This document shows positions 1,512-46,618 of a stretch of 64,000 nt of DNA, piece after piece. Location: positions 245,895 through 309,894 of the forward strand of contig NW_005434591.1 in assembly GCF_000315625.1 (NCBI RefSeq). The letters run 5' to 3'. The notes below the pieces were generated by a model. The model did not search any database. It saw only the letters and a list, made by a program, of their open reading frames with translations, and was not told the origin of the DNA. The DNA is from Guillardia theta CCMP2712 (taxonomy: Eukaryota > Protista > Cryptophyta). The number at the start of each line of letters is the position of its first letter. Positions within the stretch are counted from its first letter, which is position 1. The position numbers and the translations under genes are program-made.

Positions 1512-4500
1512 ATGGAGCTGGATGAGTTCTGCCAGGATGACTTCGACGTCAAGCGCTGGGTCAACGAGCAAGTACGCTCCAGCACCGCCCTTGCAGAGGC
1601 CGCAGGGCACGTGAAAGGGTCGAATGTAGATGATCACCTGGCAACCCTCGTGGTGAAGCTTCAGCTGCTGAGCCAGTCGACGAACAAGTCCATAGATGAC
1701 TCGGCTGTCAAGCTTCTCTCAGAGCTACCCAAGGTTGAGGACCTGACTTGTCAAGCCTCGCACCTGACTTGCCTCCTCCAGGCCATGATAGATATACAGC
1801 GAGTGGGGAGCGATGCCGAGCTGCTGGCACATCAGATGGCACAGGTGAGGTCTGCGCCCTCGTCTGCTGGGGTTGACGCTTGCTGTCAAGGTGCTCGACA
1901 AGGTGTCGGAGGTCGAGAGGAGCGGGCAGCAGACAGTCGCGGCCTTGGCTACCTTGGATGCGATCAAGACGAGGATGGAGGTGAGGGCATGAAGGAGGTG
2001 TGAAGGATCGCTGATGACGAGGACAGGAATGCGCTCATGCGCTGGGAGAGGCTGACAATTTGACGAGGACGCTCGCGCAGATTGAGCCTCTCTTTCAGGT
2101 GGAACGAGTTCGCAGCTTCCTCCCGGGAGTGACTTGCGTACATGATGCGGCAGGTGGATGAGCTGAAGCAGATCGCTGCTCGACTGGGCAGTCTCAGACG
2201 AAGCTTGCAAGCCATGGGGAACCTGGAAGAGTTCAGTGAGGTCGGAAAGCTAAAACATGTCTGCTTCGCCCTCGCTGTTGTATGCCAGGAGGCATCTTGT
2301 TTCTTGCGATGTTTTGAATGATGATCGACGTGGTTGTTTGTCTGAGTGGTCGTTTCTTGCTCACAACAGGCAGCCAACACGCTGAAGTCTTACGAGGATC
2401 GACTAGAGAAGGTCAGTACATGATGCCAGGGGGTTTTCAGCAAGACAATGACTGTCAGCGGACAGCGTATGAGCTCGAAGCTAAAGGAGGGGATCGAGCA
2501 GCTGGACGTCCAGGTGCTGCCTGCTGTTTCCTCCGACTGAGATTGTCTCTGACCGATATTTGACAGGCCACGAAGGACTGTCTCGAGATTTACGATCAGA
2601 TGCAGGTGGTTGCTGGGTATCCTGTTGGGGAGGTGCTGGCGATAATCTGAGGTGGCAGAGGAGGGATATTCTGATCACCCGATACGTTCAAGCTCGCAAG
2701 CCCCATCTGATCAAGGTCCTCAAGAGAGATTGGCAGGGACTGTTGGTGATGTTCAATCAGATCTATTCGACCTTCTCCGAGTCAAAGTCTGTGGAGTACC
2801 TTTCTCGTCTGTCCACTCTGAAAGAGGTAAGAGACTGGCGAAGGGTTTGAGTGCTGTTCTTGCTGATTTGGTCTTAGGATTTCGAGAAAGCTCTGCAGAC
2901 GGAGATGGATTGGTGTATCCAAGTATCCTGAGTCGCCTTCCACATTGGTTCTTTACGATTGTGTTAGGTGTTTCCAGACAGTGCTATCTTTGTCTCCTGT
3001 GAGTTTCTCTTGTTATCTGAGCATTTTGATCTGAATATTCTCCAGCTCTTTGGATTGATTTTATCAAGACCATCTCGACCCCATTTCAAAACTCAATGTC
3101 AGAAGTGAGTGAATGGATTGTTATCTGCCGGTGAGAGAGGCGTTTGAATTTAACTTGGATTTCAGGAGTTCTTCGAAGCAAGCAAGACAAACGAAAATTT
3201 CCACACAGTCAAGGTCGGAGAATCAAGCTTTTTTGTAGCTTTGTTCTGAAGAGCACATTTTCAGAACATCTTGGTCGAAATTTCGAACATTGCGATCACT
3301 GTTGGAGATTTGCTTTCAAGGAACAAACTGCAAGAGGTACAAGTGAGGGTAAACATCACATGTTAACCACAATGATGCAGACTGATGTCAGCCAAGCGAT
3401 CATAACGACCATGTCTTTGATTGAACGCGTTCAGAAGGATTATCCAGCAAAGGAGGTGAGGACTGAGAGCTTGCTGGTGAAAGTGACATGTTGTCAAGGC
3501 AAAGAGACTGGAGAAAGAATTCGAGATGACAAAGAGAAGTTTGAAGGTGAACACATTAGCACAACACATTAGCACAACACATTAGCACAACACATTAGCA
3601 CAACAACAGAGCAAAATTCGACATGGGGGAGGAGGATATGAATGACCTTGACCTTGACCTTGACATTGACATTGATGATGCTGGAAGAGGAGGTGGTGGT
3701 GTTGATGGTGGAGATGGAGAAGAAGTAGATGGAGGAGGAGGATTAGATAGAGATGGAGATGATTCATTCATTTCAGGAGATGCACACCTTCGGGGAGAGT
3801 TTGGATCTCTTTGAGACCGTCACGTCCAAGTCCTTCGCTTCCCTGAGGTTCGAATTCCTTGCCATGTTGCGATCGCTGACAGAGACGAGCAGAGCAGCAG
3901 GGGAGCATTCGATCGAGTTCACTGGGGGGGCAGAAGCTGTGACGACGGCTCGCATGGTCGATGAAGGTAAGACGCCCCCTCCCTCCTCCCTCCTGCATTG
4001 ATCTCCTTATTCTCCTTCCATTCTTCAATCCCTTCCTCGTTCTGGTACTCCCTCTCTTCGGCCTCTACCCTCCCCATCTTCCCCCTCCCCCTCCCTCTCT
4101 CTCCCTCGCTCTCTTTCCCTCCCCCTCTCCCCCCGCTCCTTCCCTCCCTCTCCCTCTCCCCCCTCGCTATCTTCTCATCTTTTCCCCCTCCTCCCCCCTC
4201 CTCCATCTCACCCTTCTCGCGCAGCATTCGGCAGCTTTCTGCAGGCGTTGGGGGCAGGGGTTGAGCGTCTGCGGGAGATCGCGAAGCTGGACGAGGCGCG
4301 GAAGGGAGGGGAGGTGAAGGCGAAGAGCAGCAGCGACAAGGAGGGAGGAGAGAACGACGAGATGCGATTGGTTGATGAGGCCGACTCGGATATGCTGGAC
4401 CTTGTCGATGGCAATGAGAAAGATTGGACGTTCCTGCAGGTTATTCTTGTCTTTGATGATGATGATACTAATGATGATGATCATGTTGTTCGGGAGGTGG

Positions 4501-6606
4501 TAGTGAGTTTGTTAATGATGATCGTGTTTGTATCAGGGTGCCATTTCTCTTCTGTCTTTGGCCGACGCGCTTCCCAAACAGCTGCAGGAGCTTGATGATC
4601 GTATCAAAGGTTGTTCATTTTGTTATGATGATGATCTTGTTCAACTCACTTTCTGCTTCAAGAACTCGTTTGCAGATTCGGACAGCAGCTGTTTGAACCC
4701 GTAAGCATCTGCATGTGCACTCATTGTTCTCCTTGCCTGACCTACCACCAAGACAACCATCAAGTCTGCAATGCAGTCGCCGCCCGTCCGCTACATCTTG
4801 TCAGGTAGGACAGCGCGGTTGAGAAGCTCATTCCTGACTTCATCGACTGATTTGACTCGTTGTCGTTCATCTGAGCTGAGTTTGACTGCAGATGCTCAAC
4901 GGCTCCCGGCTCTCGAGAAGCTGATCGCCAAGTCCAAGGTAAGCTGGGAACCTCCTGGGAGTGTTGCGTGACTAGTCATGCAGACGAAAGATTTCATCTG
5001 TCTTGTCAGGAGCCCGTCGATGTTGCAGTCGCATCGTGCTAAGGTGAAGAAGTGATGGTGGTGGTAATAAAGTTTGGTTGAGATTGATTGCAGGTTGAAC
5101 TTCTTCTACAAGACACGGTTGGCTTGTTGTTGTTTGATTTGACATTGACCTCAATGACCTGCTCGTGCTTGTCTTGCTGTCTCTGACTTGTTCGCTTCTC
5201 AGGCGTTGAGCTTTGTTCGCCGCCAACTGATCAACGTCGCTAAGTTGCAAGTGAGAGACCGATGGGAAAAGCAGGAGGAGAGAAGGATTGAAGGAGCAAG
5301 GCAGAGGGAGGAAGACAGGGAGGGGAGGGAGAAGACAGAGGGGAGGGGAGGGAGGGGAGGGAGGGGAGGGAGGGGAGGGGAGGGAGAGGACAGAGGGGAG
5401 GGGAGGGAGGGGAGTGTGAGGGGAGGGAGGGGAGGGGAGGGAGCAAGGGATTGTGATGAGACGTTTCAGGTGTGGGGTGAGAACAAAAAGAAAGGTCACC
5501 TCCCGTCCTTCTCCTCCTCTCCTCTCCCGCACGTCACCAACATCGCCGAGCATCTCTTCTCGTGAGTTAACTCCTCCTGTTGCAGCCTCCCCTTTCCCCC
5601 CCCTGGTTTGCCTTATCCTCTTCTGCCATCTCCTCTCTCCTCCTCCCTNNNNNNNNNNNNNNNNNNNNNNNNNNNNNNNNNNNNNNNNNNNNNNNNNNNN
5701 NNNNNNNNNNNNNNNNNNNNNNNNNNNNNNNNNNNNNNNNNNNNNNNNNNNNACTCCTCCTGGTCCTCCTCCTCCTCCCTCCCTCCCTCCTCCCTCCCTC
5801 CCTTCCCCCTCCTCCCTCCCTTCCTTCCCCCTCCTCCCTCCCTCCTCCCTCCTCTCGCACTTTCTTCTGACTGGTACTTCAGCTTGCCGGAGCAGCTCGA
5901 CCCTGCGGCGCACGACGAGGTCCCCTGCTCCACTTCAGCTGCTCTCCAGCTCACTCAGCCGCAGAACGTGGACGAAGGAAGCTCCGAGCACAAGTTCATG
6001 CAGAAGTGGCTCTCGAGGATCACCGGGGAGGTCAGCTCGAGGTCAGCTGGGGTCGGAGTTTGACATCCTTGAAGGTTGTGAGCCTCTACGTGGAGAAGAT
6101 TCTCGAGATACCCGCGCTCTCACCTTCAGGTCGCGTCCAGCTGGGCACAGACATCCAGTACATCTCTTCCATCCTCGACACTCTCGGGGCACCAGGTCTC
6201 TCCCACCACCGCCCTCCTCCCTCTCCTCCCCCCTCCTCCCTCCTTCTCAATCCTCCCTCCTACCTCCTCCTCCACTTCTTCCTTCTCTTCTTTCCTCGTT
6301 TGCTCTTCTGTCTGCACCTGCTTCCTCCTCCCTCCTCCTCCATCTTCCTCTTCTCTTCGCACGCTCCTGCTTCCCCTGCCTTCATCATCTCCTCCCCTCG
6401 TCTTATCCTCTTCCTCTCGCTCCTCCTTCCCTCCATCTCTCTGACGCTCGAGGTCGCCAGGTCTCGAGAGGCTGGAGCAGCTCCGCAAGCTAGTGGAGGC
6501 AGCCGACTCGGAGTTCGCACAGGCTTGTCTGACGGTCCCAGCGCTCGATCGCAACGTCGTGGACAAGGTTGCGCGGCAGCGAATGGCAGGAGGAAGCGCG
6601 AAGTAG
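1512..6606 (+). CDS. COG7: Conserved oligomeric Golgi complex subunit 7 (many short introns, spans an N-gap)
   Basis: N-terminus MELDEFCQDDFDVKRWVN..DDHLATLVVKLQLL and C-terminal blocks LPSFSSSPLPHVTNIAEHLFSLPEQLDP and WLSRITGE..YVEKILEIPALSPSGRVQLGTDIQYISSILDTLG match COG7. First intron 1734-1781; last exon ends at TAG 6604-6606. Internal exon boundaries were not all resolved. Confidence 0.9.
3551..3605. repeat. 13-bp tandem repeat (ACACATTAGCACA) x4, probably in a COG7 intron
   Basis: Read directly from the sequence. Confidence 0.9.
5649..5752. other. Assembly gap (N run) in a pyrimidine-rich COG7 intron
   Basis: Run of n characters. Confidence 1.
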
Positions 6607-6756
6607 AGAAGGAGGGTGAGGCGTGCGAAGAAATCTTTATGTACAGTTGATTGCAACAAGTCAAACTCACTCAATCCTCTCCTCCTCCTCCTCCTCCTCC
6701 TCCTCCTCCTCCTCCTCTTCCTCTTTTCTCGCTTCTCGTCTACTTTACATGAGCGG

Positions 6757-9700
6757 TCAGGTGGGATGCATGATCACCACAACTCCCGTGCTGTACTCTA
6801 CCGCCTTCCCTCCTCCTCCTCCGCTGCCCTTCACCTCCTCCACTTTCTTCTTCGACCTCATCCGCGAGTAGAAGCTGACAGCAGCCACCACCACCAGCCC
6901 AGCTGGGACCGCGCAGGCCACGTAGATGACTGTCTTGCTCGAGCTGCTCCTGCCGTCCTCAGCCCCTGGCGGTCCAACTTGAGCGCCGACTCCAGCTGAA
7001 GCTCCAGCTGAAGTTGAGGAGGGTTGGGGCTTGGGGGTTTCAACCAGGGTCTCGATGACCTTGACAGGAGCTGCTTCAACCCGCACGTAGTTGACGCTGA
7101 ATCCGGAGGTTGTCAAAGTCGCTCTCAGCTGGTCCTGAGCTGAGCTCGTCAGGATCCGCGAGCTCGTCTGCTCGTCCGTCTTGATCCGGAAGGAGACGGT
7201 GAGGGGTCGCGACTCCTGCCGCCTGCCGGACGAGGAAACGCCTGACACCTGTACGTTGGCTGAGCTGACGGCCAGCCCGGCACCCACGGCCGAGACGAAG
7301 TCCAGCTGACGGGCAAGGAAGGCGTTCTTGGAGCTGTTCATACCTGCAGACATGCTCAGCAGCATGTAGCTCGTCTGCCCTGCCCCTCCTGAGGACAAGG
7401 AGGCGAGAGTCGCGTTGGTCTCGGCTGAGCATACTCGATCCGCCATGTCTGTGCATGCTGACACCTCCACCTCTCCAGCAGCGCAGGGGGAGCATGCCGT
7501 GCAGGAGGAGGAACCGGGGGCCGCGGAGAAAGAGGCAGGCGGGCAGGGAGAGCAGCCTGAGGTTTCCATGAAGCTCCCGGAGGGGCAGACGCATGCCGAA
7601 CTCGAGCTGCTGCCCAGCTCAGAGGTGGCGCCGGGAGGACAAGCTGAACACTCTTGCGAGCCCGGGCTGGTCTTGTACTTGCCGCCCTCGCACTTGGAGC
7701 AGCTGCCGCTGCCAGTGTAGCCGGGGTCACAGAGACAGTCGGCGATGGTGAAGCTGGAGGCAGGAGCATGCGAGTTGGCCGGGCAAGGAGAACATCGGGT
7801 GTTGTCGAAGAGAGCGCAAGCAGCCTCGACGTAGTGGTCAGCTGGGCAGGCGGAGCAGGCGAGGCAGTAGCACTTGCCAGGCTGGAAGAACGGGACGTCC
7901 TTGATGGTGTAGGTGCCGATCTTGCACTGCAGCTTGCAAGGGTTGCATAGCGTGTCCTTGCTCGGCGTGCAGTTGGCAACGAAAGCAGCTTCGGGGGGGC
8001 ATACGCTGCACTGCGAGCATGAGGAGGAGGCGTAGGAGGAGGCGAAGTTGAAGCCAACGCAAGGAGAGCAGCTGTCAGACCCCTGGGTCGACTTGTACGT
8101 GCCGGGTTCGCAGGAGACGCATTCCTCCCCGTTTACGCCGGTGAAGCCCGCGTTGCAGGTGCAGTTGGAGCCCGAGGTCGCTCCCTCCTTCTCCGTCGTC
8201 GCATTGGGAGGACACGCCTGACATGCCGTCGCTCCCAACGAGTCCGAGAAAGTCCCGAGGCTGCAGTCGGTGCAGGAGCCATTGCCGGGAAGCCCCTTGC
8301 TCTTGCCAGCAGCACATGCTGAGCAGGCAGTCCGGCTTGTTTCGTTCCCTCCTGCAGACGCGTCAGTCAGTCACGCACCTCTCCGCTCCTCCTCTCACCT
8401 CCGACTGTCTGCACCTCGTACCCAGCATCGCAAGAGCAGGCGGAAAGAGAGGAGCTGCCGGCGGGAGAGAAGGAATTCACAGGACACGGCAAGCACGAGC
8501 TCATGTTCGTGGAGGATGTTTGTGGGTTGTAAGTGCCTGCTGGGCACTGCTGGCATGAAGTCAGTCCGTCACTCTTGTACGTTCCTGCTAAGCAGCCGAC
8601 GCATTCTCGTTCGGCCAGCTGGAAGCCCTCGTTGCACAGACATCCGTCAGCAGAGGTGGTCGACTCCGAGGAGTAGGAGTTGGGTCGGCAGGAGAAGCAG
8701 GCAGTCGCTCCTCGCGAGTCCATGTAGGTGTCAGCTGGGCAAGGAGAGCAGGTGCTCTCCAGTATCGAAGCCTTGTACTTGCCGATCTCGCAGAGTTCAC
8801 ATCCTTGGGTGGATATGTAGAAGCCCAAGCCACACACGCAGTCAGACAAGGACGAGCTTCCTCTCCCGCTTGTCGTCGTGTTGCCAGGACATACCGAGCA
8901 GGCCGTGCTTCCTGTTTGGATAGCGTACTTTCCCAGCTCGCAGAGCGTGCACACGCTGCTGCCCGTCCTGTTCGTGTACTGTCCTGCTTCGCAAGCAGAG
9001 CAGACGCCAACAGACAGCAAGTAGAAACCAGCGTTGCAGAAGCAGCCGTTGAGAGAGGACGCGCCGCTGTTGGACCACATGCCTGCAGGACACGTGGAGC
9101 AGAATGATGACCCTGTCAACTCCATATAGCTCCCAGCTGGACAAGGCGAGCAGGACCCGCTCCCGTCAAGGTTCTTGTACCTGCCAGCTGGACAGGCTTG
9201 ACAGGGACCCCCGTTCGCCCCAGTGTACCCTCGATTGCACGTGCAATTGAGTCTGCTGGAGCTGCCCGATGGGGCGAAGGAGTTGGCAGGGCAGAGATCG
9301 CAGGAGGAGGAGCCGGAGACGTTGGCAAACGAGCCTGACGAACAGACTTCGCAGGTGGTGGCAGAGGGGGAAGCAGAGAAATATCCCAGCTGACAGGCGA
9401 GGCACCGCTCTCCGTCTTGGGCGCGATAGAACCCTGGCTGACAAGCCTCACACAGACTGTCATTGAATCGCTCGTACCCTGCGTTGCACGTGCAGTTCAT
9501 GATTGAGATGCTCATTGCTGGCGAGAAAGAGTCTGAAGGACAGGCAAGGCAATCCAACGATGCCACGAAATCTTTGTAGGTACCGGCTGAACACCCGACA
9601 CAAGACATGGTGCCGTTCGACCCGAAGCCTTTGATGCAGCTGCAGTCGTAGCTTCCTGCTGCTGATGTGCTTGCATAAGGGCAGCTAATGCAGGTCTTGT

Positions 9701-39428: not shown

Positions 39429-39757
39429 ATGCCTTCTGCGTGGAGTCAGACGCAGCAATTCTTCCATCTGCTCCTCGCCTTCGCATTCATCATCGTCCTC
39501 TCCCAGGTCTCCACGGCCTGCAGCGTCTGGTGCCTGACAGGAGGAGCAGGTTGCCGGAGCAGTGGTTGCCGTCCTTGTTGCGTTTGTGGGGATGGTGGTA
39601 TGGATGTAAGTGAAGTCGCTCCCTGACGGCTCCCTGACGGCTGTCAAGGTATCGCATCCTCGATCACGACGATCAGTACTACGTTGAGACGGGCAAGCGC
39701 GTGACCGACCGCGACTATGGAGACGTTCGCAGCGAAGCCGAGAGGAGGAAACTCTAA
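39429..39757 (+). CDS. 80-aa small membrane protein (3 exons)
   Basis: Removing two 43-nt introns (39507-39549 and 39606-39648, both with CTGAC) gives MPSAWSQTQQFFHLLLAFAFIIVLSQVAGAVVAVLVAFVGMVVWMYRILDHDDQYYVETGKRVTDRDYGDVRSEAERRKL*. Confidence 0.7.
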
Positions 39758-39986
39758 TGGTTACTCCTGCTGCAGCGAACGCTCTGGGGGTAACAGGTGG
39801 TGCAATGAGATCCGAGGAGGAGGTTTGCGGTGGGAGTGCGGAGGAGGAAACAAGCAAACACGTCGATATTCTTTGTGATCGAATGGAAGACGAAAGAAAG
39901 AATCAAACACAAACCAAGTCAACAAAAACTCTTCTCATCCCCACATTAGCAACTGATCGCCAGAGGCTCCGGTAGGTCTCTCGACC

Positions 39987-40964
39987 TCAGTGCATGATGC
40001 CTCGAATGTCTGTCTCAGTCAGAGGACGGTCGTACACCCGGAAGTCATCGACGAGGCCCTTGAGGTAGTTTGTGCTCCATTCCTTCACCTTTAGCATGTT
40101 GTTGATCGCTCCTGGCGTGTCCTGTACCTTCCTGGCGTCCAACCCTCCCGACCACTCAACACCTCGCACGCTGTTGCCCTGCTGGTCGTACCTCACAGTC
40201 CGCTTGCCGAGGAAGGAGAGCTCTTTGCTACAGCTCCCGGCGTCGGCGAGCATGAGGACTCTGGACCCGTCCAGGTACATCACGACGGTATCCCCCGCAA
40301 ACACAAAGGCGAGGTGGTGCCAGGATAGGTGATCCCAGCCTTTGAGCGAGTTTCCCGCGTACCCGTCAGGCAAAGCAAGGTGCCAATGACCGCACCAGTA
40401 TCCTCCCCAGTGAGCAGGGCCGATACGTCCCATGACGAACGCGCTTCCTCCTACCAGGCTGAGGTCCCAGCCCCTCGAGCTGTCTCTCGACCCGTACTCC
40501 TTGTACCACATGGCCACCGTCCCATCGTGAATCTGCACGGGGTCGAACCTGACGGCACTGCCGCACGTGGCTGACTGAGTGATGTACTTGCTGAGCATCT
40601 CAATCCGCTTCTGATTGCTGTAGAAGCAGTCTGTCTTCTGCCCTGGCGCAAGTGAGTTGTATGACTTGACTGCATCCGTGTACTCGCAGTCATCGCGGTA
40701 GGTGCTCGTGTCTCGTGGGCAGGATGCGGCGAAGTAAACTGCAAGGCCAACGGCTCCTTGCTGTCCTGACCTCGGACAGGAAGCGCCTGAAAGTCGGCAG
40801 TCAGCATTCTTGTTGTGGCTCGAGGAATCCTGGAAGGAACTCTGACCCCCGGTTTCATCGAACTTCAAGTGGATCAGGAGTTCTTGACACTCTGCTCCTG
40901 CTACCAGCATGAGGAAGAGGCAGAGAGGGAACTTCAACACGGCCAACGACATGTTGTTGTTCAA
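39987..40964 (-). CDS. Secreted LamG/concanavalin A-like lectin-fold protein
   Basis: Signal peptide, then HLKFDETGGQSSFQDSS, WHHLAFVF..MYLDG and GLVDDFRVYDRPLTETDI, which are typical LamG-like jellyroll motifs. Intronless. Confidence 0.85.
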   Translation of the reverse strand: MNNNMSLAVLKFPLCLFLMLVAGAECQELLIHLKFDETGGQSSFQDSSSHNKNADCRLSGASCPRSGQQGAVGLAVYFAASCPRDTSTYRDDCEYTDAVKSYNSLAPGQKTDCFYSNQKRIEMLSKYITQSATCGSAVRFDPVQIHDGTVAMWYKEYGSRDSSRGWDLSLVGGSAFVMGRIGPAHWGGYWCGHWHLALPDGYAGNSLKGWDHLSWHHLAFVFAGDTVVMYLDGSRVLMLADAGSCSKELSFLGKRTVRYDQQGNSVRGVEWSGGLDARKVQDTPGAINNMLKVKEWSTNYLKGLVDDFRVYDRPLTETDIRGIMH

Positions 40965-41351
40965 GTTGATGAATTCTCACGAGGAATCGATGTTGCTGTT
41001 GCTGTTGCTGTTGCCGTTCTTGTCGCCAGACTTGTTGTTCCTCTTGTTCCTCTTGTTCCTCTTGTTCCTCTTGTCCTCTTGTTCTCCTCGTACGGTCTCT
41101 TCTTCTCCTCTTCCCCTCCTCTCTCTCTCTGAGCCCAGTCCCTTCTGCCCTCCTCGTCAGTCCCCGTCGTCTCCGTCCGTTGAGGATGACAGCCAACCAT
41201 CACTACCCCACCACCTCCCATGCTTACCACCCCTCCTCTCACCACCCCTCCATATCCCCACCAAATGAGCAGGGGTCCCATTCGCCGAATCGGGAGCGGC
41301 AAGGCAGGTCGAGCTAGAGAGCAGGAGCAAGGTGAAGACTAGCCGCCGACG

Positions 41352-41570
41352 ATGTGGAGCTTGCTGTGGAGTTGGGAGGAGGCACATGACCCGTTGGCGG
41401 GACCCTATGGCTACTCCAATGGTCCTGGAACGGGCTCAGTGATCGCTCCTCCTTCACTCCTCAATGGCTCGCAGCAACGGTCTCAATACTCGTCTCAGCA
41501 GGCATCACAAGACAACGGAGCATGTCGTGAGGGCGACGACCGTTACGGATGTTTCACTGGCGATTATTGA
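41352..41570 (+). CDS. Possible 72-aa small protein
   Basis: ATG-to-stop ORF (MWSLLWSWEEAHDPLAGPYGY...) just downstream of a TACCCC/ACCCC cluster. No family recognised. Confidence 0.35.
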   Translation: MWSLLWSWEEAHDPLAGPYGYSNGPGTGSVIAPPSLLNGSQQRSQYSSQQASQDNGACREGDDRYGCFTGDY

Positions 41571-41765
41571 GGCTCACGACGGAGAAGCATGGATCACATT
41601 TGAATCCAGCACAGCATGCATGTAGAAGAACTTCGAGATAATCTGCGTCTTGTGTTTGACTTGGTGCTGATTGCACTGCACATACACACATTGCAGCAGT
41701 ATCCGAGAACAGTAGAGGACATAGGTTTGTGATGACAGTACAGTAGATACGTCGTTTAATAAACA

Positions 41766-43019
41766 TTAATTTCCATACACAGGCACCGCGGTCGATACAC
41801 CATCATATTTGGCTGTAGCTGTCATCGTTGATGCCGGCTTTTGCACATCTGTTGAGTAGCCAATAGTATCGAGCCCATACCTGATACATATGAGAATGCA
41901 CCCATGTCGAAAGCTACAAGGCATACCTCTTCACAAAGCTAGCAAACCAGATGTTGTTTGCCTTGAAGTCTGCCAACAGCGCGTGAGCATTTCAACCTCC
42001 ACAACAAGATGCCACCTGTCACTGACTTCAACACTGCAAGCTCCTGTGCCTTCTCCATGGTAGAGGACATGGTCATAGGAGGTCTCAAGTGAGGGTTTGC
42101 AGCTGCGAGGTCTTTCAACCACTTGTGAAGCTCATCTTCGATCTGCCATCGAGTCAGACGGACACAGATTCAGAATCCGCAGGTTGCAACACATACCGCT
42201 GGGAACTTGGGCAAATGCGCTTTTGTGAGTTTTAAGTCCAGTCCGAGATCTCTTGCTTTCTTCAACTTGTTGAGGTAATTAGGTTTCATCATCTGCGAGA
42301 TGTATGATCTGCAGCAGCCCAACATGTCCATAGCCTCTTTCGCAGTGATTTCCTTCACGAGAGTCAAACAGGCCTCAATCTGTGATATCCTCTCACGATA
42401 CCTTGCTCTCGAGCTTCAAGGCTACTTCCAGGCGTTCTCCAAGGGATATTCTCTTTTCTTTTTCCCTTCTCCTGCTACACCATGAGCTACCAAAAAACGA
42501 TCACATCGATGCATCAATTACGCTTGCTTAGCTCGCATTCCAGCTGAAACTGCAGCTCTCGCCCCAGGAGCACGCTTTCCGAATCTACATGTTGCAATCA
42601 TTGAGGGAGTTGAGACTGCACGGAGCTCACCGTCGGTCGATCTTCTTGTTCGCCTCTTCAGCTGAGACGTCTCTCGTAAGAGTTACTGTAGTTCCTCCTC
42701 CCGTGGTCAGAGTCACAGTGGACCCCGTTGGTCCGATGAGTTTCGCGGCGACGAGGGTTGCATCAAGGCCTTCCACTGAATCGTCATCAATCTTAGCAAC
42801 CACGTCACCGATCTGCAATTCTGTCTGTGCTGCGCTCTTGTCCTCCTTGATTCCAGTTATTGTCAGCTTTCCTTCCATGTTGGGCCAAAGCATGAGGCCT
42901 ACTGTACTTTGATCCTCAGCAAGAGGAGGTAACGGCTTTGGCGGAGGAGGCATGGGAGCAGCAGCATGGAGGCCAGCAGCATGCCAATCAGCTCTCATGA
43001 ACTGATGTGGAGGAGGCAT
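41766..43019 (-). CDS. PDZ domain fused to a CENP-B/pogo-type tandem helix-turn-helix DNA-binding module (321 aa, 7 exons)
   Basis: Introns 42585-42630, 42475-42521, 42353-42401, 42143-42196, 41970-42015 and 41881-41926 (46-54 nt, all GT-AG) leave a 966-nt frame. It reads as a PDZ (VGLML..ITGIKEDKSAAQTELQIGDVVAKIDD..LIGPTGSTVTLT), then KRISLGERLEVALKLESKEITAKEAMDMLGCCRSYISQMM, then PKFPAIEDELHKWL..TMEKAQELA..DFKANNIWFASFVKRYGL. Confidence 0.8.
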
Positions 43020-44039
43020 GATTGCGGTGTTGGATGGTATAGAACACCAGAAGAAGTGATTGGCGGTCCTGATATGACAGTCTGTGACACGGTTGACAGG
43101 TGCATCGTTTCACTCTCGCTGGCCTGCGAGGAAGCAGCTTTCCACAGAGACATTTGTGCTAATTCCTAATGGACGCTGACTTGATATAGGCCAAAGAAGA
43201 CGATTGGATGAGATAGGACACAATCCAGGCGAAGAAATAAGCAGTCCTGTCGAGAGAGAAAGATAGATGTCTGCATAACAAACAGTGAATAATGATAACA
43301 AAACAATGATCAGTTCAAGAAGAGGCCTCGATGTAACAGATCACTACTATGCATTAAAAGTCGAGTACATCGACATCTACCCTACCAGGAGAATGCTTTG
43401 AAAAAGCAACAATTTCATCGAACGAATACAAGAGTAGCCTCAAAATTCATAATTAGATGCTTGCTATGCCATGATTCGTGATGGAGAGAAACGATCTCAG
43501 AAGTCAGTGAGTGGAGATCTGATGGTGAACGACAAAAAATCTTCCCATGGTTTGAAAATTCACCAACAATCAGATCATTTGCAAAAGAAATGGTGAAAAT
43601 CGAACAAAACAAATATGGACACTGCATCAATGAAGAAAGGAAGGAATGCTATTTGACCAAAGCATGCTGGAACGAGGAATGAGAGGAGAGAGAGAGAGAT
43701 GAACAAAGTGATACGAAGACAGACTGGTGGAGCAGATGATGGAAGTGAATGTAAGGAACAGATCATGAACATAATTTCACAACAGAAAGAATCAGATTCC
43801 GCCGTAGACGCGCGGCATTGCCGGGGGGCGCAGGAGAAACCATGTTGATACAGAACCACCTTTCTCCGGACCCCTCACCCCCTTGATGAGCGTTTTACTT
43901 CCCATTCTTCGATTAGGTACGATGATTGCTTGATTAACATATAATCGTACATAGAGAATCGTAGACCTTGGTAGCCATAAGAACAAGCCTTGTCACCTTT
44001 TAGTTATGGGGTGGTATATTGCAGTGGGTGGGGTGGTGA

Positions 44040-44640
44040 TGCTTGTTGGATTTGAATATTATAACATTGTACTAGGAGTGGGTCAATTATGTACGATTCC
44101 CTATTGTCATACAGAAATAATACTGGTACTAAAAAGAGTTATATTTGTTACTGTGAAGGTTGTAACTGTTAGTTTATGGTATTACCAGTGTGATACCTTT
44201 TCAATAGTTGATTTAATCAGATACAAAAATAATACCATTATCAACAAGTTGTATAAAATTGGTACTGATTATTGTACATAAATTATCTGTCACTCGTAAT
44301 ATCAGTACAAACTAATAACTTTTCTCGATTCTTTGGGTACAAAGTGTTTGTGACTAAAACAATATAAAACAATTTAATCTGTTTACTGACCCATCATGTT
44401 ACTACCACAGCTCACACAACTAACTACCAATCGGTATCGTTATCCTACTGTTTTTGATTGAGTCACTTCTATCTCGATACACATTTATATCAATTTATTG
44501 AAGCTTTTGTATATGAATTTCACTTCGCTTCAGTACTACACTTTCTTCTGTCGTACAGAGTTGAGTTGAAAAATTGCTCACACCAAAATCAATTTTTATA
44601 TTCCCTTACGAATATATTGGTCAAATTAAATAATTTTCAC
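44040..44640. other. AT-rich non-coding block abutting a GC-rich island
   Basis: Visibly much lower GC than the surroundings, with repeated GTAC words and no convincing ORF. Confidence 0.7.
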
Positions 44641-45115
44641 CGGATCAGCAATGCACGATGATCCGCCGATCAAGGATGACGCGATGATCCTGGGCCCAAA
44701 CTTTGAAGCCGGTTCCGAAACTTGGCGGCCGCTATCCCGGAAGCCTTCGCCGAGCGCCCAGCGGCCGTGTTGGAAGCCTGCCAGGAAGGTCCCGGGTACC
44801 GTCACTGGGCTCACTGCTCAGCGGTACGGTACTACGGTACGGTACGCCGGTCCGATCCGACCCGTCACGGCCCCGGAGTCGCCGGAGTGACTGCCGGGAC
44901 CGTACTTTACTCTCGGATCCCACTGAGGCTCGGAGGTCTGTGAGCCTGGGCTCATCTCGAGCAGGCGAAATAAATAGAAAATCTGGTTTGGCAAGTTGAG
45001 AAAAAGCCAACTAGTAAGCCTGAAGTTGATGACCGCCCAAACTTGAAGTGAACTCCATGGTGAGTTGACGAATACTTTTTATTCGGTAAAACACCGACTT
45101 AATTATTGATTCAAG

Positions 45116-46618
45116 TTAAAATGTACACACGCGCTCCAATCCTTCAAGCGGCGGACTTCCCTTTGGTTTGCAACCTTGTTCGCTCGAGTTTGCCCCAGAG
45201 AACAAAACTTTTCTCTTCTCCCACAAGTATCGGAGCACGCTGTTTTTGTGCTTGGTCGGTGTGGCTGCTGACTGTTGGTTTGGCTGCTTTGTACCTCTGC
45301 TATCGACCTGCTCCTCCGCATGGTTGTTGCTGACATCTCTGTTATCTTGATCGCTCTGATTGGACTCCGTCCTATGATTCATGTGCATGCCCCTGTGGTT
45401 GATACTTTCTGTAATCATGTAGGCCAGCTTCTCAGAATACTCCTTGTCCCCGTATTCTGATTCCCGTTTGCTGATGTCAGCGTTGAAACCCCCAATCCTC
45501 TTCCGGCCCATCTCATGCAGTATGTCCTGAATGTCTTCCAAGAAATTCTGCTGAGGGCCAATCACACTGCCCGGCCGACAGATTCTCACCCAAGCAATGG
45601 CTTCCGCTGCTGTGAAGGTGTAATGCTTCATGATGTAAATAGCGATTAAAGTTCCCGTCCTTCCTAATCCTGCAAGACAATGCACAGCAATGGTCTTGTT
45701 TGTGTTTTCCGCTATCCTAAGGAATCGGTCAATCACCTGTGCAGGAGGTATGGTACAGTCTGGAAACACGAGGTCGTGGTGTTCGAACCCTCCTTTCAGA
45801 AATTCTTCCTTGGGATACTCAGCGGAATTCAATCGCACGATTGTGCTGACGTCATGGCATCGGAAAACTTCGAAGTAGTCTGAAGGGATGAAGCACAACG
45901 CATCGTTGCTCGTCCGCTTCCCCCTCGGCCCTCGAAACGCCAAGAACTTGCCGGGAACCACCTCATGCATGTCTCCATTGCAGGGGTCCTCGTAATAGAA
46001 GTACTCTTCCTTGTGAAACTCAGCAGGCTTGTAAAGTCCTGCCGCAACGGCTTTGATCAAAGCGGACCAGCAGTCTTCCAACTTGAGGTCATAGGTACTC
46101 TTGACCCATGTAGCATCGCGATAAGGTCGCAGAACCCCCCGTGGCAAACCAGAGAAAATGTGCATTACGTCAAGAACAGAAGCACCCATGTTAAGGACAA
46201 GAAATGCTCCCAAAAGATATACTGCATTTGTCACATGCTCTTTCTCCATGGCTGAGTAAAAGACGATCTTTTTCTTCTCGTAGGCCTTGTCAGATAGCAA
46301 GGTCATCAAGATGTCACAGAAATGGTGGGTTGTTCCCAGATTGAAAGGACCAAAATCAGCGCAAAATGGTGCATATCGCAGTTTCTTGTTCATCGTGAAG
46401 TACTTGTACTCTTCATCCGACACAGGGCTTGAACGCAGGCACGTAAAGTACAGTCTACCTTCAAGGACAGGCATCAATGTTGAGAAAGGATCCGCTGCAC
46501 AATTTGAGAGGAAGAATGGGACTTCATTCTGTTCGTTCAGGAAGAGGAGTATACTCTTGCTAGCAACGGGAGTAGCGGCTGACGAAAGCGCATCCTCCAT
46601 TGCCCCCCCTTCACGCAT
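45116..46618 (-). CDS. CDC14: Cdc14-family dual-specificity phosphatase (intronless, 500 aa)
   Basis: N-terminal DSPn block (YAPFCADFGPFNLG, PYRDA), VPGKFLAFRGP, catalytic VHCLAGLGRTGTLI and WVRICRPGSVIGPQQNFL. Confidence 0.93.
   Translation of the reverse strand: MREGGAMEDALSSAATPVASKSILLFLNEQNEVPFFLSNCAADPFSTLMPVLEGRLYFTCLRSSPVSDEEYKYFTMNKKLRYAPFCADFGPFNLGTTHHFCDILMTLLSDKAYEKKKIVFYSAMEKEHVTNAVYLLGAFLVLNMGASVLDVMHIFSGLPRGVLRPYRDATWVKSTYDLKLEDCWSALIKAVAAGLYKPAEFHKEEYFYYEDPCNGDMHEVVPGKFLAFRGPRGKRTSNDALCFIPSDYFEVFRCHDVSTIVRLNSAEYPKEEFLKGGFEHHDLVFPDCTIPPAQVIDRFLRIAENTNKTIAVHCLAGLGRTGTLIAIYIMKHYTFTAAEAIAWVRICRPGSVIGPQQNFLEDIQDILHEMGRKRIGGFNADISKRESEYGDKEYSEKLAYMITESINHRGMHMNHRTESNQSDQDNRDVSNNHAEEQVDSRGTKQPNQQSAATPTKHKNSVLRYLWEKRKVLFSGANSSEQGCKPKGSPPLEGLERVCTF

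What the first reader, a model, noticed from the sequence alone, without database searches (positions are those of the whole stretch)
41766..43019. Hidden 7-exon gene fusing a PDZ domain to a domesticated CENP-B/pogo DNA-binding module
Seen: the ORF track shows only fragments, but six canonical 46-54 nt introns give one 321-aa frame reading Pro-rich leader, PDZ, basic linker, HTH1, HTH2, short tail. Established: the pattern KR..L.ERL..A.K / P.IED.L.KW / EKAQELA / FKA...WF..F.KR.GL is the psq-type plus Tc5/CENP-B HTH pair that pogo transposases use to bind their terminal inverted repeats. There is no DDE domain, no TIRs were seen around the gene, and it is intron-rich, so it looks like an old domestication. 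Inference: a transcription or chromatin factor that recruits partners through their C-terminal peptides. I do not know this architecture from characterised proteins. The fusion depends on intron 42475-42521, whose GTAATT donor removes an in-frame TAA, so retaining it would give a PDZ-only isoform.
Basis: partly seen in the sequence, partly recalled or inferred. Interest (0 to 1): 0.75.

Follow-up and report, generated by a model that had tools for sequence, protein, structure and literature searches.

The report
PDZ fused to pogo-derived DNA-binding domain
This is a real, expressed gene of the alga Guillardia theta that joins a PDZ protein-binding domain to a DNA-binding module derived from a pogo transposase; it is already in public databases as a hypothetical protein, so the unusual and unstudied part is the domain combination.

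Summary
Two transcript-derived ORFs (P0024 from MMETSP, P0040 from JGI) contain every window exon at 100% identity in the predicted order.

- The intron 2 acceptor is the CAG 3 nt downstream, so intron 2 is 42472-42521 and the protein has one Arg fewer.
- The protein starts 45 codons upstream at ATG 43153 (365 aa). The assembly lacks one base at 43022/43023, which hides this.
- The gene is not hidden. It is GUITHDRAFT_144180 / UniProt L1IR60, "HTH CENPB-type domain-containing protein". That 299-aa model wrongly skips exon 2.

Domains:
- PDZ and HTH_Tnp_Tc5 both pass Pfam cut-offs.
- The C-terminal half aligns over the whole CENP-B DNA-binding domain (1HLV, Z 9.6).
- It also aligns to the N-terminus of a pogo-like transposase of the same genome (hhalign E 1e-10).
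- There is no DDE domain and there are no TIRs.

Orthologues with the same architecture occur in Hanusia, Geminigera and environmental contigs, where the ORF is intronless. All 15 exon differences to close relatives are synonymous.

The module border lies inside exon 1, not at intron 2.

The function, a DNA-bound adaptor, is inferred. The scan has separately noted CENP-B-HTH+PB1 fusions in this genome.

Verdict: a new variant of a known kind, of moderate interest.

The parts
43020..43153 (-). N-terminal extension of the coding region (MSLWKAASSQ...TPQ-I). In this assembly it is out of frame with the rest because one base is missing at 43022/43023.
   Evidence: The 43-aa translation of 43153..43025 equals residues 1-43 of transcript ORF P0024. 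L028 and L029 carry an extra A or G here. Orthologues P0028 and P0041 also start MSLWKAAP.
42631..43019 (-). It holds an invariant Pro-rich motif PMPPPPKPLPPL (about 42921-42956), the PDZ domain (about 42660-42905), and the first residues (KKIDR) of the conserved basic arm of the HTH module.
   Evidence: Pfam PDZ scores 28.2 bits against a cut-off of 23.2. PDZ-less paralogues align from EEANKKIDRR onward.
42585..42630 (-). Intron 1, 46 nt, GTGAGC..TAG, phase 2. It splits the conserved motif K[IV]D[KR]R|[FY]GKR.
   Evidence: It is spliced out in P0024 and P0040. The C245 paralogue has an intron at the same position and phase (L024 4958..4912).
42522..42584 (-). Exon 2, 63 nt (FGKRAPGARAAVSAGMRAKQ). 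It is part of the basic arm and is skipped in the public 299-aa model.
   Evidence: It is present in P0024, P0040, P0039 and all orthologues and PDZ-less paralogues. It shows 0 of 63 mismatches to L028 and L029.
42472..42521 (-). Intron 2, 50 nt, GTAATT..CAG.
42402..42471 (-). Exon 3 (RREKEKRISLGERLEVALKLESK). It holds the end of the basic arm and the first helix of HTH1.
   Evidence: AF2 helix 206-217. It is 65% identical to the paralogue's exon.
42353..42401 (-). Intron 3, 49 nt, phase 0.
   Evidence: The position is shared with the C245 paralogue (LENK|EITPKEA).
42197..42352 (-). Exon 4. It holds the rest of HTH1 (EITAKEAMDMLGCCRSYISQMMK), the linker, and the start of HTH2.
   Evidence: It has 13 relatives in 1.84 billion representatives. 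It is 35-39% identical to the HTH1 region of intronless G. theta Tc5 ORFs. AF2 pLDDT is 76-87.
42143..42196 (-). Intron 4, 54 nt, phase 0.
   Evidence: It shows 12% mismatches and a 4-nt indel against L028 and L029. The position is shared with the paralogue (FPQ|MEEE).
42016..42142 (-). Exon 5 (IEDELHKWLKDL...EKAQELAVLKSVT). It is the first part of HTH2, of Tc5/CENP-B type.
   Evidence: Pfam HTH_Tnp_Tc5 covers 269-332 of P0024. hhalign to the pogo-like ORF is.
41970..42015 (-). Intron 5, 46 nt, GTGGCA..CAG, phase 1.
   Evidence: The position and phase are shared with the paralogue (G|EFKA).
41927..41969 (-). Exon 6 (FKANNIWFASFVK), the recognition-helix region of HTH2.
   Evidence: It is 69% identical to the paralogue. 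The FKA..W...F.KR motif is shared with Tc5 ORFs.
41881..41926 (-). Intron 6, 46 nt, phase 2.
   Evidence: The position is shared with the paralogue (VK|R|YGL).
41766..41880 (-). Exon 7. It holds the end of HTH2 (YGLD), a 33-residue poorly conserved tail, and the stop TAA at 41766-41768. No DDE domain follows.
   Evidence: Pfam finds no DDE_1.

Best explanation
Shown:
- This is a single expressed nuclear gene of Guillardia theta CCMP2712 (GUITHDRAFT_144180).
- Its mRNA joins seven coding blocks into a 365-aa protein.
- The protein runs, in order: a conserved N-terminus (MSLWKAA...); an invariant proline-rich motif; one PDZ domain; a conserved basic arm (K-I-D-R-R-F-G-K-R ... R-R-E-K-E-K-R); and a bipartite CENP-B-type DNA-binding domain of two helix-turn-helix units, the second being Pfam HTH_Tnp_Tc5. 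The protein ends there.
- The DNA-binding half is homologous to the N-terminal DNA-binding region of pogo-like transposases, of which this genome keeps two with a DDE_1 domain.
- The protein itself has no catalytic domain and no terminal inverted repeats.
- It has orthologues of the same architecture in Hanusia, Geminigera and unnamed environmental relatives, and it evolves under purifying selection.

Inferred:
- It is a host gene built from a domesticated transposase DNA-binding module.
- The two HTH units and the basic arm probably bind a specific DNA site, as CENP-B does on its box.
- The PDZ domain and the proline-rich motif probably hold protein partners at that site, so the protein would act as a DNA-anchored adaptor in transcription or chromatin regulation.
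- The border between the PDZ and HTH modules lies within exon 1. A sister family carries the same HTH module behind a different N-terminus. The architecture therefore arose by swapping the N-terminal module, not by splicing two genes together at intron 2.
For: - Frame and introns.
- Transcript ORFs P0024 and P0040 contain all exons at 100% identity.
- Public annotation and organism.
- On P0001 and P0024, PDZ scores 26/25.8 bits (cut-off 23.2) and HTH_Tnp_Tc5 scores 28.5/27.9 bits (cut-off 22.2). All 10 of 10 orthologues match both families.
- The AF2 model has pLDDT 76-87 in the HTH region.
- The top Foldseek PDB hit is 1hlv_A, the CENP-B(1-129)-DNA complex, at E 6.6e-4.
- VIA gives Z 9.6 with 128 of 131 residues aligned, model residues 192-330. 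The next Z is 5.4.
- hhalign to the G. theta ORF L002:1162-3009:+ (DDE_1 79 bits plus Tc5) gives probability 97% and E 1.1e-10. Residues 185-334 align with residues 27-178 of that ORF.
- Exons differ at 0.6% and introns at 5.2% from relatives. The counts are 6 and 9 synonymous codon differences and 0 non-synonymous.
- Their taxonomy is.
- P0058 and P0045 are uninterrupted ORFs on 15-34 kb eukaryotic contigs.
- COG7 lies nearby both in L030 and in the window.
- There are no TIRs. The genome has only two DDE_1 loci.
Against: - HTH1 reaches no Pfam cut-off. The best hits are HTH_23 at 13.6 bits and HTH_17 at 15.9 bits.
- A sequence profile finds no CENP-B chain in the PDB.
- The AF2 model is poor overall (mean pLDDT 54.8) and weak in the PDZ (about 50-65). 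PDZ structural matches reach only Z about 5.
- The rmsd to 1HLV is 11.8 A, so only the two units match, not their mutual orientation.
- The carboxylate-binding loop reads G-L-M-L (G-I-M-I in orthologues), not the usual G-L-G-F. Peptide binding is therefore not assured.
- No DNA target, partner or localisation is known.
- Named orthologues come from one family only, Geminigeraceae.
Confidence: 0.65

Rival explanations
1. There are two neighbouring genes: a PDZ-only gene ending at the TGA at the intron 1 donor, and a separate HTH gene. The single frame would then be an artefact of the reader's choice of introns.
For: The exon 1 ORF ends in TGA exactly at the donor. A prokaryote-style gene call on related genomic DNA gives a 189-aa PDZ-only product, P0029. 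PDZ-only and HTH-only paralogues exist in the genome.
Against: Two spliced transcript ORFs carry both halves. Hanusia and Geminigera transcripts do the same. Orthologues on environmental contigs encode both halves in one uninterrupted ORF. The conserved motif KIDRR|FGKR spans intron 1. No in-frame ATG lies upstream of exon 2 within intron 1.
Confidence: 0.02
2. The public 299-aa model is the main product. Exon 2 would be skipped, with one 159-nt intron from 42472 to 42630.
For: It is the deposited model. Skipping removes 66 nt and keeps the frame, so a minor isoform is possible.
Against: Both transcript ORFs and all orthologues and paralogues contain the exon 2 peptide. Exon 2 has 0 of 63 differences to relatives, while its flanking introns differ. 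A 159-nt intron is three times longer than any other intron in the gene.
Confidence: 0.05
3. It is a decayed or still mobile pogo-type transposon fragment, not a host gene.
For: The DNA-binding half is homologous to that of pogo-like transposases. The genome holds at least 26 Tc5-type HTH loci.
Against: There is no DDE_1 domain and no flanking inverted repeats beyond 14-18 nt imperfect pairs. The locus is unique, with one paralogue at 65-73% identity. It has six spliceosomal introns, orthologues in other genera, and only synonymous change.
Confidence: 0.02
4. The protein is the same, but its role is in genome defence or centromere and heterochromatin function, not gene regulation. It would bind repeats or ends of pogo-like elements and recruit silencing or structural factors through the PDZ. 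CENP-B and the fission-yeast CENP-B homologues act on repeats and retrotransposons in this way (established knowledge of those proteins).
For: It shares the DNA-binding fold with CENP-B. The module originally recognises transposon ends. Pogo-like ORFs persist in the genome.
Against: No repeat family or centromere sequence is tied to it. Only two DDE_1 loci exist, so there are few elements to police. The many DDE-less HTH-pair ORFs with varied partner domains look more like a transcription-factor family.
Confidence: 0.2
5. The PDZ does not capture C-terminal peptides of partners. Instead it mediates self-association, or it binds an internal motif such as the protein's own invariant proline-rich stretch, and so regulates or dimerises the DNA-binding domain.
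For: The loop is G-L-M-L, not G-L-G-F. The position that is His in class I PDZ domains is an invariant Ala (alignment to the PDLIM5 PDZ). The motif PMPPPPKPLPPL directly before the PDZ is invariant in all 10 sequences. The C-terminal tails of orthologues are not conserved and do not end in a hydrophobic residue.
Against: Nothing has been tested directly. Many PDZ domains with variant loops still bind C-termini (general knowledge of the family).
Confidence: 0.15

Closest known systems
CENP-B DNA-binding domain (human CENP-B residues 1-129, PDB 1HLV)
   Same: Both have a bipartite DNA-binding domain of two helix-turn-helix units behind an N-terminal arm. The model aligns over 128 of 131 residues at Z 9.6. 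The second unit is Pfam HTH_Tnp_Tc5. Both derive from pogo-type transposases (PMC7386202 and PMC10027918 for CENP-B).
   Different: CENP-B keeps a transposase-derived central domain and a C-terminal dimerisation domain (established knowledge) and has no PDZ. This protein ends 33 residues after HTH2 and carries an N-terminal PDZ. Identity is only about 19-22%, and HTH1 does not reach the CENP-B_N cut-off.
Pogo/Tigger-type transposases, here the G. theta ORFs at G000:C3:179 kb (L002:1162-3009:+) and C16:415 kb (L001:241-1932:-)
   Same: The N-terminal HTH pair is homologous at 31% identity over 146 columns, E 1.1e-10. Shared motifs are PxFPA(L/I)ED.L..W and FKA..W(F)..F..R.GL.
   Different: The transposase ORFs carry DDE_1 at 79-89 bits. 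This gene has none, and it has introns, orthologues and a PDZ.
Other domesticated pogo genes with added domains (POGK with KRAB, POGZ with zinc fingers, Jerky/TIGD, fission-yeast Abp1/Cbh1/Cbh2)
   Same: They follow the same principle, in which a pogo-derived DNA-binding module is recruited into a host protein, sometimes fused to a protein-interaction or effector domain (PMC7386202; general knowledge).
   Different: Those proteins mostly retain the DDE-derived region. None is described with a PDZ. Full-text searches found no paper combining PDZ with HTH_Tnp_Tc5 or CENP-B domestication.
PDZ-less sister family in cryptophytes (G. theta C245 gene = UniRef A0A7S4P233/P0035; P0014, P0019, Hanusia P0008)
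   Same: The basic arm plus HTH pair is the same, at 58-62% identity and hhalign E 2e-65. All six introns of the window gene are shared in position and phase with the C245 gene.
   Different: Its N-terminus is a different conserved region (VDALHP...QALNQ) with no PDZ. The C245 gene has at least five extra introns.
G. theta CENP-B-HTH + PB1 ORFs (G000:C146, L004:829-2172:+)
   Same: A DDE-less CENP-B-type HTH pair is joined to a protein-interaction domain in the same genome. hhalign to A1 gives E 6.9e-9.
   Different: The partner domain is PB1 and lies C-terminal to the HTH pair. Those ORFs are intronless and multi-copy on one contig.
PDZ-only gene of G. theta at G000:C3:810 kb and its relatives (P0030-P0038)
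   Same: The PDZ, including the following TRDVSAEEANK stretch, is 57-58% identical.
   Different: It continues into a Pro/Ala-rich repeat tail, with no HTH within 7 kb downstream.

Membership tests
PDZ domain (Pfam PF00595) | Sequence match above the curated cut-off | tested here: met
   Exon 1 alone scores 28.2 bits against 23.2. P0001 scores 26 and P0024 scores 25.8. All 10 of 10 orthologues match. The PDB profile search hits the PDLIM5 PDZ at E 1.6e-5.
PDZ domain (Pfam PF00595) | PDZ fold (beta-sandwich with two helices) and a carboxylate-binding loop of G-L-G-F type | tested here: inconclusive
   The AF2 strands and helix follow the PDZ order, but pLDDT is only about 50-65. Z is about 5 to PDZ domains of the CtpA, CtpB and Prc proteases. 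The loop reads G-L-M-L or G-I-M-I.
HTH_Tnp_Tc5 / HTH CENPB-type (Pfam PF03221) | Sequence match above the curated cut-off | tested here: met
   P0001 scores 28.5 bits and P0024 scores 27.9 bits against 22.2. All 10 of 10 orthologues match. Exon by exon, and in the six-frame genome scan, the locus is missed because two introns split the domain.
CENP-B_N / HTH_psq first helix-turn-helix (Pfam PF04218, PF05225) | Sequence match above the curated cut-off for HTH1 | tested here: not met
   There is no hit to PF04218 or PF05225. The only hits are HTH_23 at 13.6 bits and HTH_17 at 15.9 bits. Related intronless ORFs of the genome score 14-25 bits on CENP-B_N.
CENP-B-type bipartite DNA-binding domain | Two consecutive three-helix HTH units that can be superposed on CENP-B 1-129 | tested here: met
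   Foldseek ranks 1hlv_A first at E 6.6e-4 with 129 columns. VIA gives Z 9.6 and 128 of 131 aligned, well above the next row at 5.4. The rmsd of 11.8 A shows that the relative orientation of the two units is not reproduced.
pogo/Tc1-mariner transposase | DDE_1 catalytic domain after the HTH pair | tested here: not met
   No DDE_1 is found in P0001, P0024 or any orthologue. The protein ends 33 residues after HTH2. The genome-wide DDE_1 scan hits only C16 and C3.
pogo/Tc1-mariner transposon | Terminal inverted repeats flanking the ORF, and multiple copies | tested here: not met
   Only 14-18 nt imperfect inverted pairs occur in 39500-45500, and none brackets the gene. The exons have one self-match and one diverged paralogue in 87 Mb.
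Domesticated transposase-derived host gene | Orthologues in other species, purifying selection, expression, and loss of mobility features | tested here: met
   Codon differences are 15 synonymous and 0 non-synonymous. There is no DDE or TIR. COG7 lies in the neighbourhood in both genomes.
Sequence-specific DNA-binding transcription or chromatin factor | Demonstrated DNA binding and nuclear localisation | not testable with these tools
   This needs DAP-seq, SELEX, ChIP and localisation experiments.

The most novel reading that the evidence does not exclude
Cryptophytes of the Guillardia group may have turned one pogo-derived CENP-B-type DNA-binding module into a lineage-specific family of regulators by pairing it with different protein-interaction domains. 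The pairings seen here are PDZ in this gene, PB1 on contig C146, and an unrelated conserved N-terminus in the sister family. In the PDZ member, a PDZ domain would work in the nucleus and tether partners to specific DNA sites through their C-terminal peptides. That mode of recruitment is not described for any characterised DNA-binding protein.
Probability: 0.3. Interest if true: 0.55.

Novelty: new variant of a known kind. Interest (0 to 1): 0.4.

Why it matters
Transposase DNA-binding domains are a recurrent source of new regulators. The known examples come mostly from animals, fungi and plants. Here the same process is seen in a cryptophyte alga, with an unusual partner domain.

PDZ domains normally organise membrane and cytoplasmic signalling complexes. 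A conserved PDZ joined to a sequence-specific DNA-binding domain would be a new way of bringing proteins to DNA.

There are also three practical results:
- The public gene model lacks a conserved exon.
- The reference assembly lacks one base, which hides the true start.
- Geminigeraceae share the family, which gives a clean set of sequences for experiments.

Tried and rejected
1. Exon-by-exon Pfam scans found the PDZ, but nothing significant for the HTH exons. The six-frame PF03221 scan of the genome missed the locus. Both misses arise because introns split the domains, and they are not evidence of absence.

2. The PDB sequence-profile search returned only PDZ chains and no CENP-B. The link to CENP-B needed the structure comparison.

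3. I looked for a PDZ, or a remnant of one, in the C245 paralogue (GLSIKPEVMVGVYGNSI...). tblastn gave only chance-level hits. Pfam found nothing in P0008 or P0014. hhalign to the family starts only at EEANKKIDRR. Its upstream exons instead match the N-terminus of P0014. I rejected the remnant idea.

4. I looked for HTH exons downstream of the C3 PDZ paralogue and found none within 7 kb.

5. The TIR search found nothing convincing.

6. Literature searches for this architecture or for this gene found nothing specific. One look-up failed on a search term that was too short.

7. The joined step was left out. My own spliced model was never given to any search or folding tool. The exons were searched one by one by reference. 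All full-length tests used the public proteins P0001, P0024 and P0040 by id. The joined sequence was built only inside scripts, to check length and frame and to count codon changes.

8. No contig looked human.

9. I did not build a tree of the HTH family and did not run a second structure prediction for the PDZ.
Full report
**The observation**

The feature lies on the minus strand. The six GT-AG introns measure 46, 47, 49, 54, 46 and 46 nt.

**The genome**

The window is G000:C83:245895-309894 of an 87.1-Mb assembly in 669 contigs. The self-hit of exon 4 in the representative library is EKX38587.1 / XP_005825567.1, GUITHDRAFT_144180 of Guillardia theta CCMP2712. It is also UniRef100_L1IR60, named "HTH CENPB-type domain-containing protein". 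The gene is therefore not hidden.

The public model has 299 aa.

**Searching the spliced model**

I did not hand my own joined model to any search or folding tool. That step is left out. The full-length tests were made on public proteins that carry ids.

**Transcript evidence**

The word search with P0001 returned P0024, an MMETSP transcript ORF marked complete, 365 aa. Every exon translation of the window is found in it at 100% identity and in the predicted order: N-terminal extension 1-43, exon 1 46-174, exon 2 176-195, exon 3 197-219, exon 4 220-271, exon 5 272-313, exon 6 315-327 and exon 7 329-365.

P0040 is a second ORF, from a 1690-nt JGI contig. It has the same spliced sequence from MEGKL to the end, including exon 2. 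All six introns are thus confirmed at the RNA level.

- The mRNA reads KQARREKEK, so the intron 2 acceptor is the CAG at 42474-42472 of a TAG-CAG tandem. Intron 2 is 42472-42521 (50 nt), and there is one Arg fewer.
- The ORF starts at ATG 43153 (MSLWKAASSQ...) and runs through ...TPQ-I-MPPPHQ. The window is one base short at 43022/43023 (CCGCA-ATCATG).

Two metagenome contigs of a close relative (L028 and L029, 95-96% identical over 2.3-3.2 kb) read CCGCAAATCATG and CCGCAGATCATG. Orthologues also begin MSLWKAAP. The reference assembly most likely lacks one base, and that explains why the public model starts at 43019.

**Selection**

Against L028, the exons differ at 6 of 963 positions (0.6%). 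The introns differ at 15 of 287 positions (5.2%) and carry a 4-nt indel in intron 4. Exon 2 has no differences, while both flanking introns do.

In the spliced frame, all 6 codon differences to L028 and all 9 to L029 are synonymous.

**Domains**

- Exon 1 alone passes Pfam PDZ, at 28.2 bits against a cut-off of 23.2.
- The HTH exons give nothing significant on their own.
- The six-frame PF03221 scan of the genome finds 26 places but not this one, because introns split the domains.
- On the full-length public proteins, HTH_Tnp_Tc5 passes at 28.5 and 27.9 bits against 22.2, together with PDZ. All ten aligned orthologues match both families.
- HTH1 reaches no Pfam cut-off. The best hit is HTH_23 at 13.6 bits.

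An AlphaFold2 model of P0024 built on the ten-sequence alignment A1 is weak overall (pLDDT 54.8), but it reaches 76-87 in the HTH region.
- Foldseek against the PDB puts 1hlv_A, CENP-B(1-129) bound to the CENP-B box, first at E 6.6e-4.
- VIA-align gives Z 9.6 with 128 of 131 residues aligned, covering model residues 192-330. The next row scores 5.4.
- The rmsd of 11.8 A shows that the two units match but their orientation does not.
- The PDZ part (85-167) matches PDZ domains of C-terminal processing proteases at Z about 5, on a low-confidence stretch.

**Origin of the DNA-binding half**

G. theta has exactly two DDE_1 loci, on C16 and C3. They lie in open frames of 564 and 616 aa that also carry HTH_Tnp_Tc5.

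hhalign of A1 against the C3 ORF gives probability 97% and E 1.1e-10 at 31% identity. P0024 residues 185-334 align with residues 27-178 of that ORF, which is its N-terminal region before DDE_1. Shared motifs include P(K/L)FPA(I/L)ED.L..W and FKA..WF.SF..R.GL.

Most other Tc5 loci are short intronless ORFs without DDE. Exon 4 is 35-39% identical to the region just upstream of their Tc5 domain.

One of these ORFs, on C146, combines CENP-B_N (25 bits), Tc5 and PB1 (28 bits). Earlier notes of this scan describe the same kind of ORF.

The window gene has no DDE_1, no TIR-like repeats around it, and only one diverged paralogue.

**Where the fusion lies**

A sister family without PDZ shares the HTH pair and the basic arm. 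Its members are P0002/P0014, P0003, P0004/P0005/P0018/P0019, Hanusia P0008, and the G. theta C245 gene with its transcript P0035.

hhalign of A1 to P0014 starts at P0024 residue 166, EEANKKIDRR (E 2e-65). The motif K[IV]D[KR]R-[FY]GKR is common to both families, and in the window gene it spans intron 1.

In the C245 gene there is an intron at the same place and phase (L024 4958..4912, 47 nt). The other five introns of the window gene are also shared in position and phase. The paralogue has at least five more introns.

The border between the modules is therefore inside exon 1, about 15 nt before its end. It is not at intron 2.

The paralogue's N-terminus matches that of P0014 (VDALHP...QALNQ) and is not a PDZ remnant.

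The closest PDZ elsewhere in the genome is on C3, at 57% identity through TRDVSAEEANK. It continues into a Pro/Ala-rich tail without any HTH.

**Conservation**

Proteins with PDZ plus Tc5 at 57-63% identity form four clusters: P0025, P0026, P0027 and P0028, with up to 31 members each. Named members are Hanusia phi (P0039, 96% identical) and Geminigera cryophila (P0041). Together with Guillardia, all are Geminigeraceae.

In the alignment, the proline-rich motif PMPPPPKPLPPL, much of the PDZ, the basic arm and both HTH units are invariant or nearly so. The N-terminal region and the tail vary.

P0058 (350 aa) and P0045 (396 aa) are single uninterrupted ORFs on environmental contigs of 15-34 kb. 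The neighbouring genes on those contigs are split by introns. This is independent genomic proof of the fused reading frame. It also shows that richness in introns is not a good age marker here.

A COG7 gene lies 2.5 kb from the orthologue in L030 and 36 kb from the gene in the window. The gaps between its matched segments are about 37-50 nt, which fits short introns as the norm in this genome.

**How it probably works**

The following is shown: the gene, its splicing, its domains, its homology to the pogo DNA-binding region, its loss of catalytic and mobility features, and its conservation.

The following is inferred:
- The basic arm and the two HTH units bind a specific DNA sequence, in the manner of CENP-B.
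- The PDZ, perhaps with the invariant proline-rich motif, holds partner proteins.
- The protein therefore acts as a DNA-anchored adaptor in transcription or chromatin control.

Cautions on the PDZ:
- Its loop is G-L-M-L and not G-L-G-F.
- The position that is His in class I PDZ domains is an invariant Ala.
- The protein's own tails are not conserved.

Self-association or internal-motif binding therefore remains open. A role at repeats or transposon ends, as for CENP-B and its yeast relatives, is the main functional rival.

**Novelty**

Domesticated pogo-derived DNA-binding proteins are well known (PMC7386202, PMC10027918). I found no paper on a PDZ fusion or on this gene.

The protein itself is already in public databases with an automatic name. 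I class it as a new variant of a known kind, of moderate interest.

Noticed in passing
window 43022-43023 (minus-strand gene): The assembly is one base short (CCGCA-ATCATG). The G. theta transcript ORF reads P-Q-I-M, and two related genomic contigs read CCGCA[A/G]ATCATG. This separates a conserved 45-codon N-terminal extension (ATG 43153) from the annotated start.
   Followed up: yes
window 42472-42630: The public model XP_005825567.1 / L1IR60 (299 aa) treats this whole stretch as one intron. It therefore drops the conserved 63-nt exon 2 (42522-42584), which two transcripts and all relatives contain.
   Followed up: yes
L004:829-2172:+ (G000:C146:117-118 kb; similar hits at C146:80733 and C146:107283): An intronless 448-aa ORF combines CENP-B_N (25 bits), HTH_Tnp_Tc5 (39.7 bits) and a PB1 domain (28.1 bits). 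This is a second fusion of the same DNA-binding module with an interaction domain, and there are at least three Tc5 hits of this kind on one contig.
   Followed up: partly
L024 about 3450-5330, minus strand (G000:C245:39.4-41.3 kb): An expressed PDZ-less paralogue (transcript P0035 = UniRef A0A7S4P233) shares all six introns of the window gene and has at least five more. Its N-terminus (GGDSSVDALHP...SILQALNQ) matches that of P0014 from another transcriptome.
   Followed up: partly
G000:C16:415412-415975 and G000:C3:179694-180239: These are the only two DDE_1 matches in the 87-Mb genome. Both lie in long open frames (564 and 616 aa) with a Tc5 HTH. In contrast, at least 26 Tc5 HTH loci exist, most of them in short DDE-less ORFs.
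   Followed up: partly
L025 about 6650-8210, minus strand (G000:C3:809.6-811.2 kb): A PDZ-only paralogue is 57-58% identical in the PDZ. It is followed by a tail of KPAPAA-type Pro/Ala repeats, and one intron splits the PDZ.
   Followed up: partly
L030, L031 and L032 at 6001-7053; L033 at 1336-2526: Orthologues of the PDZ-HTH gene are intronless on environmental eukaryotic contigs, although the neighbouring genes there (GPDH, COG7) are fragmented by introns. This suggests complete intron loss in those lineages, or intron gain in Guillardia before the paralogues split.
   Followed up: partly
L028:1330-1899 and L029:518-1087: In the close relative, the intron 1 donor is GTTAGC and not GTGAGC. 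That removes the in-frame TGA, so a prokaryote-style gene caller reads 16 codons into the intron and reports a 189-aa PDZ-only product (P0029).
   Followed up: yes
window 40800-41400: A low-complexity stretch has long overlapping ORFs on both strands (QEEQEEQEE / LLFLLFLL, Pro- and Ser-rich). It lies just beyond the 3' end of the gene and probably belongs to the convergent plus-strand neighbour that ends near 41570.
   Followed up: no
window 1518-6200, plus strand: A COG7 homologue is split into many short matched segments with gaps of about 37-50 nt. The same gene lies 2.5 kb from the PDZ-HTH orthologue in L030.
   Followed up: no
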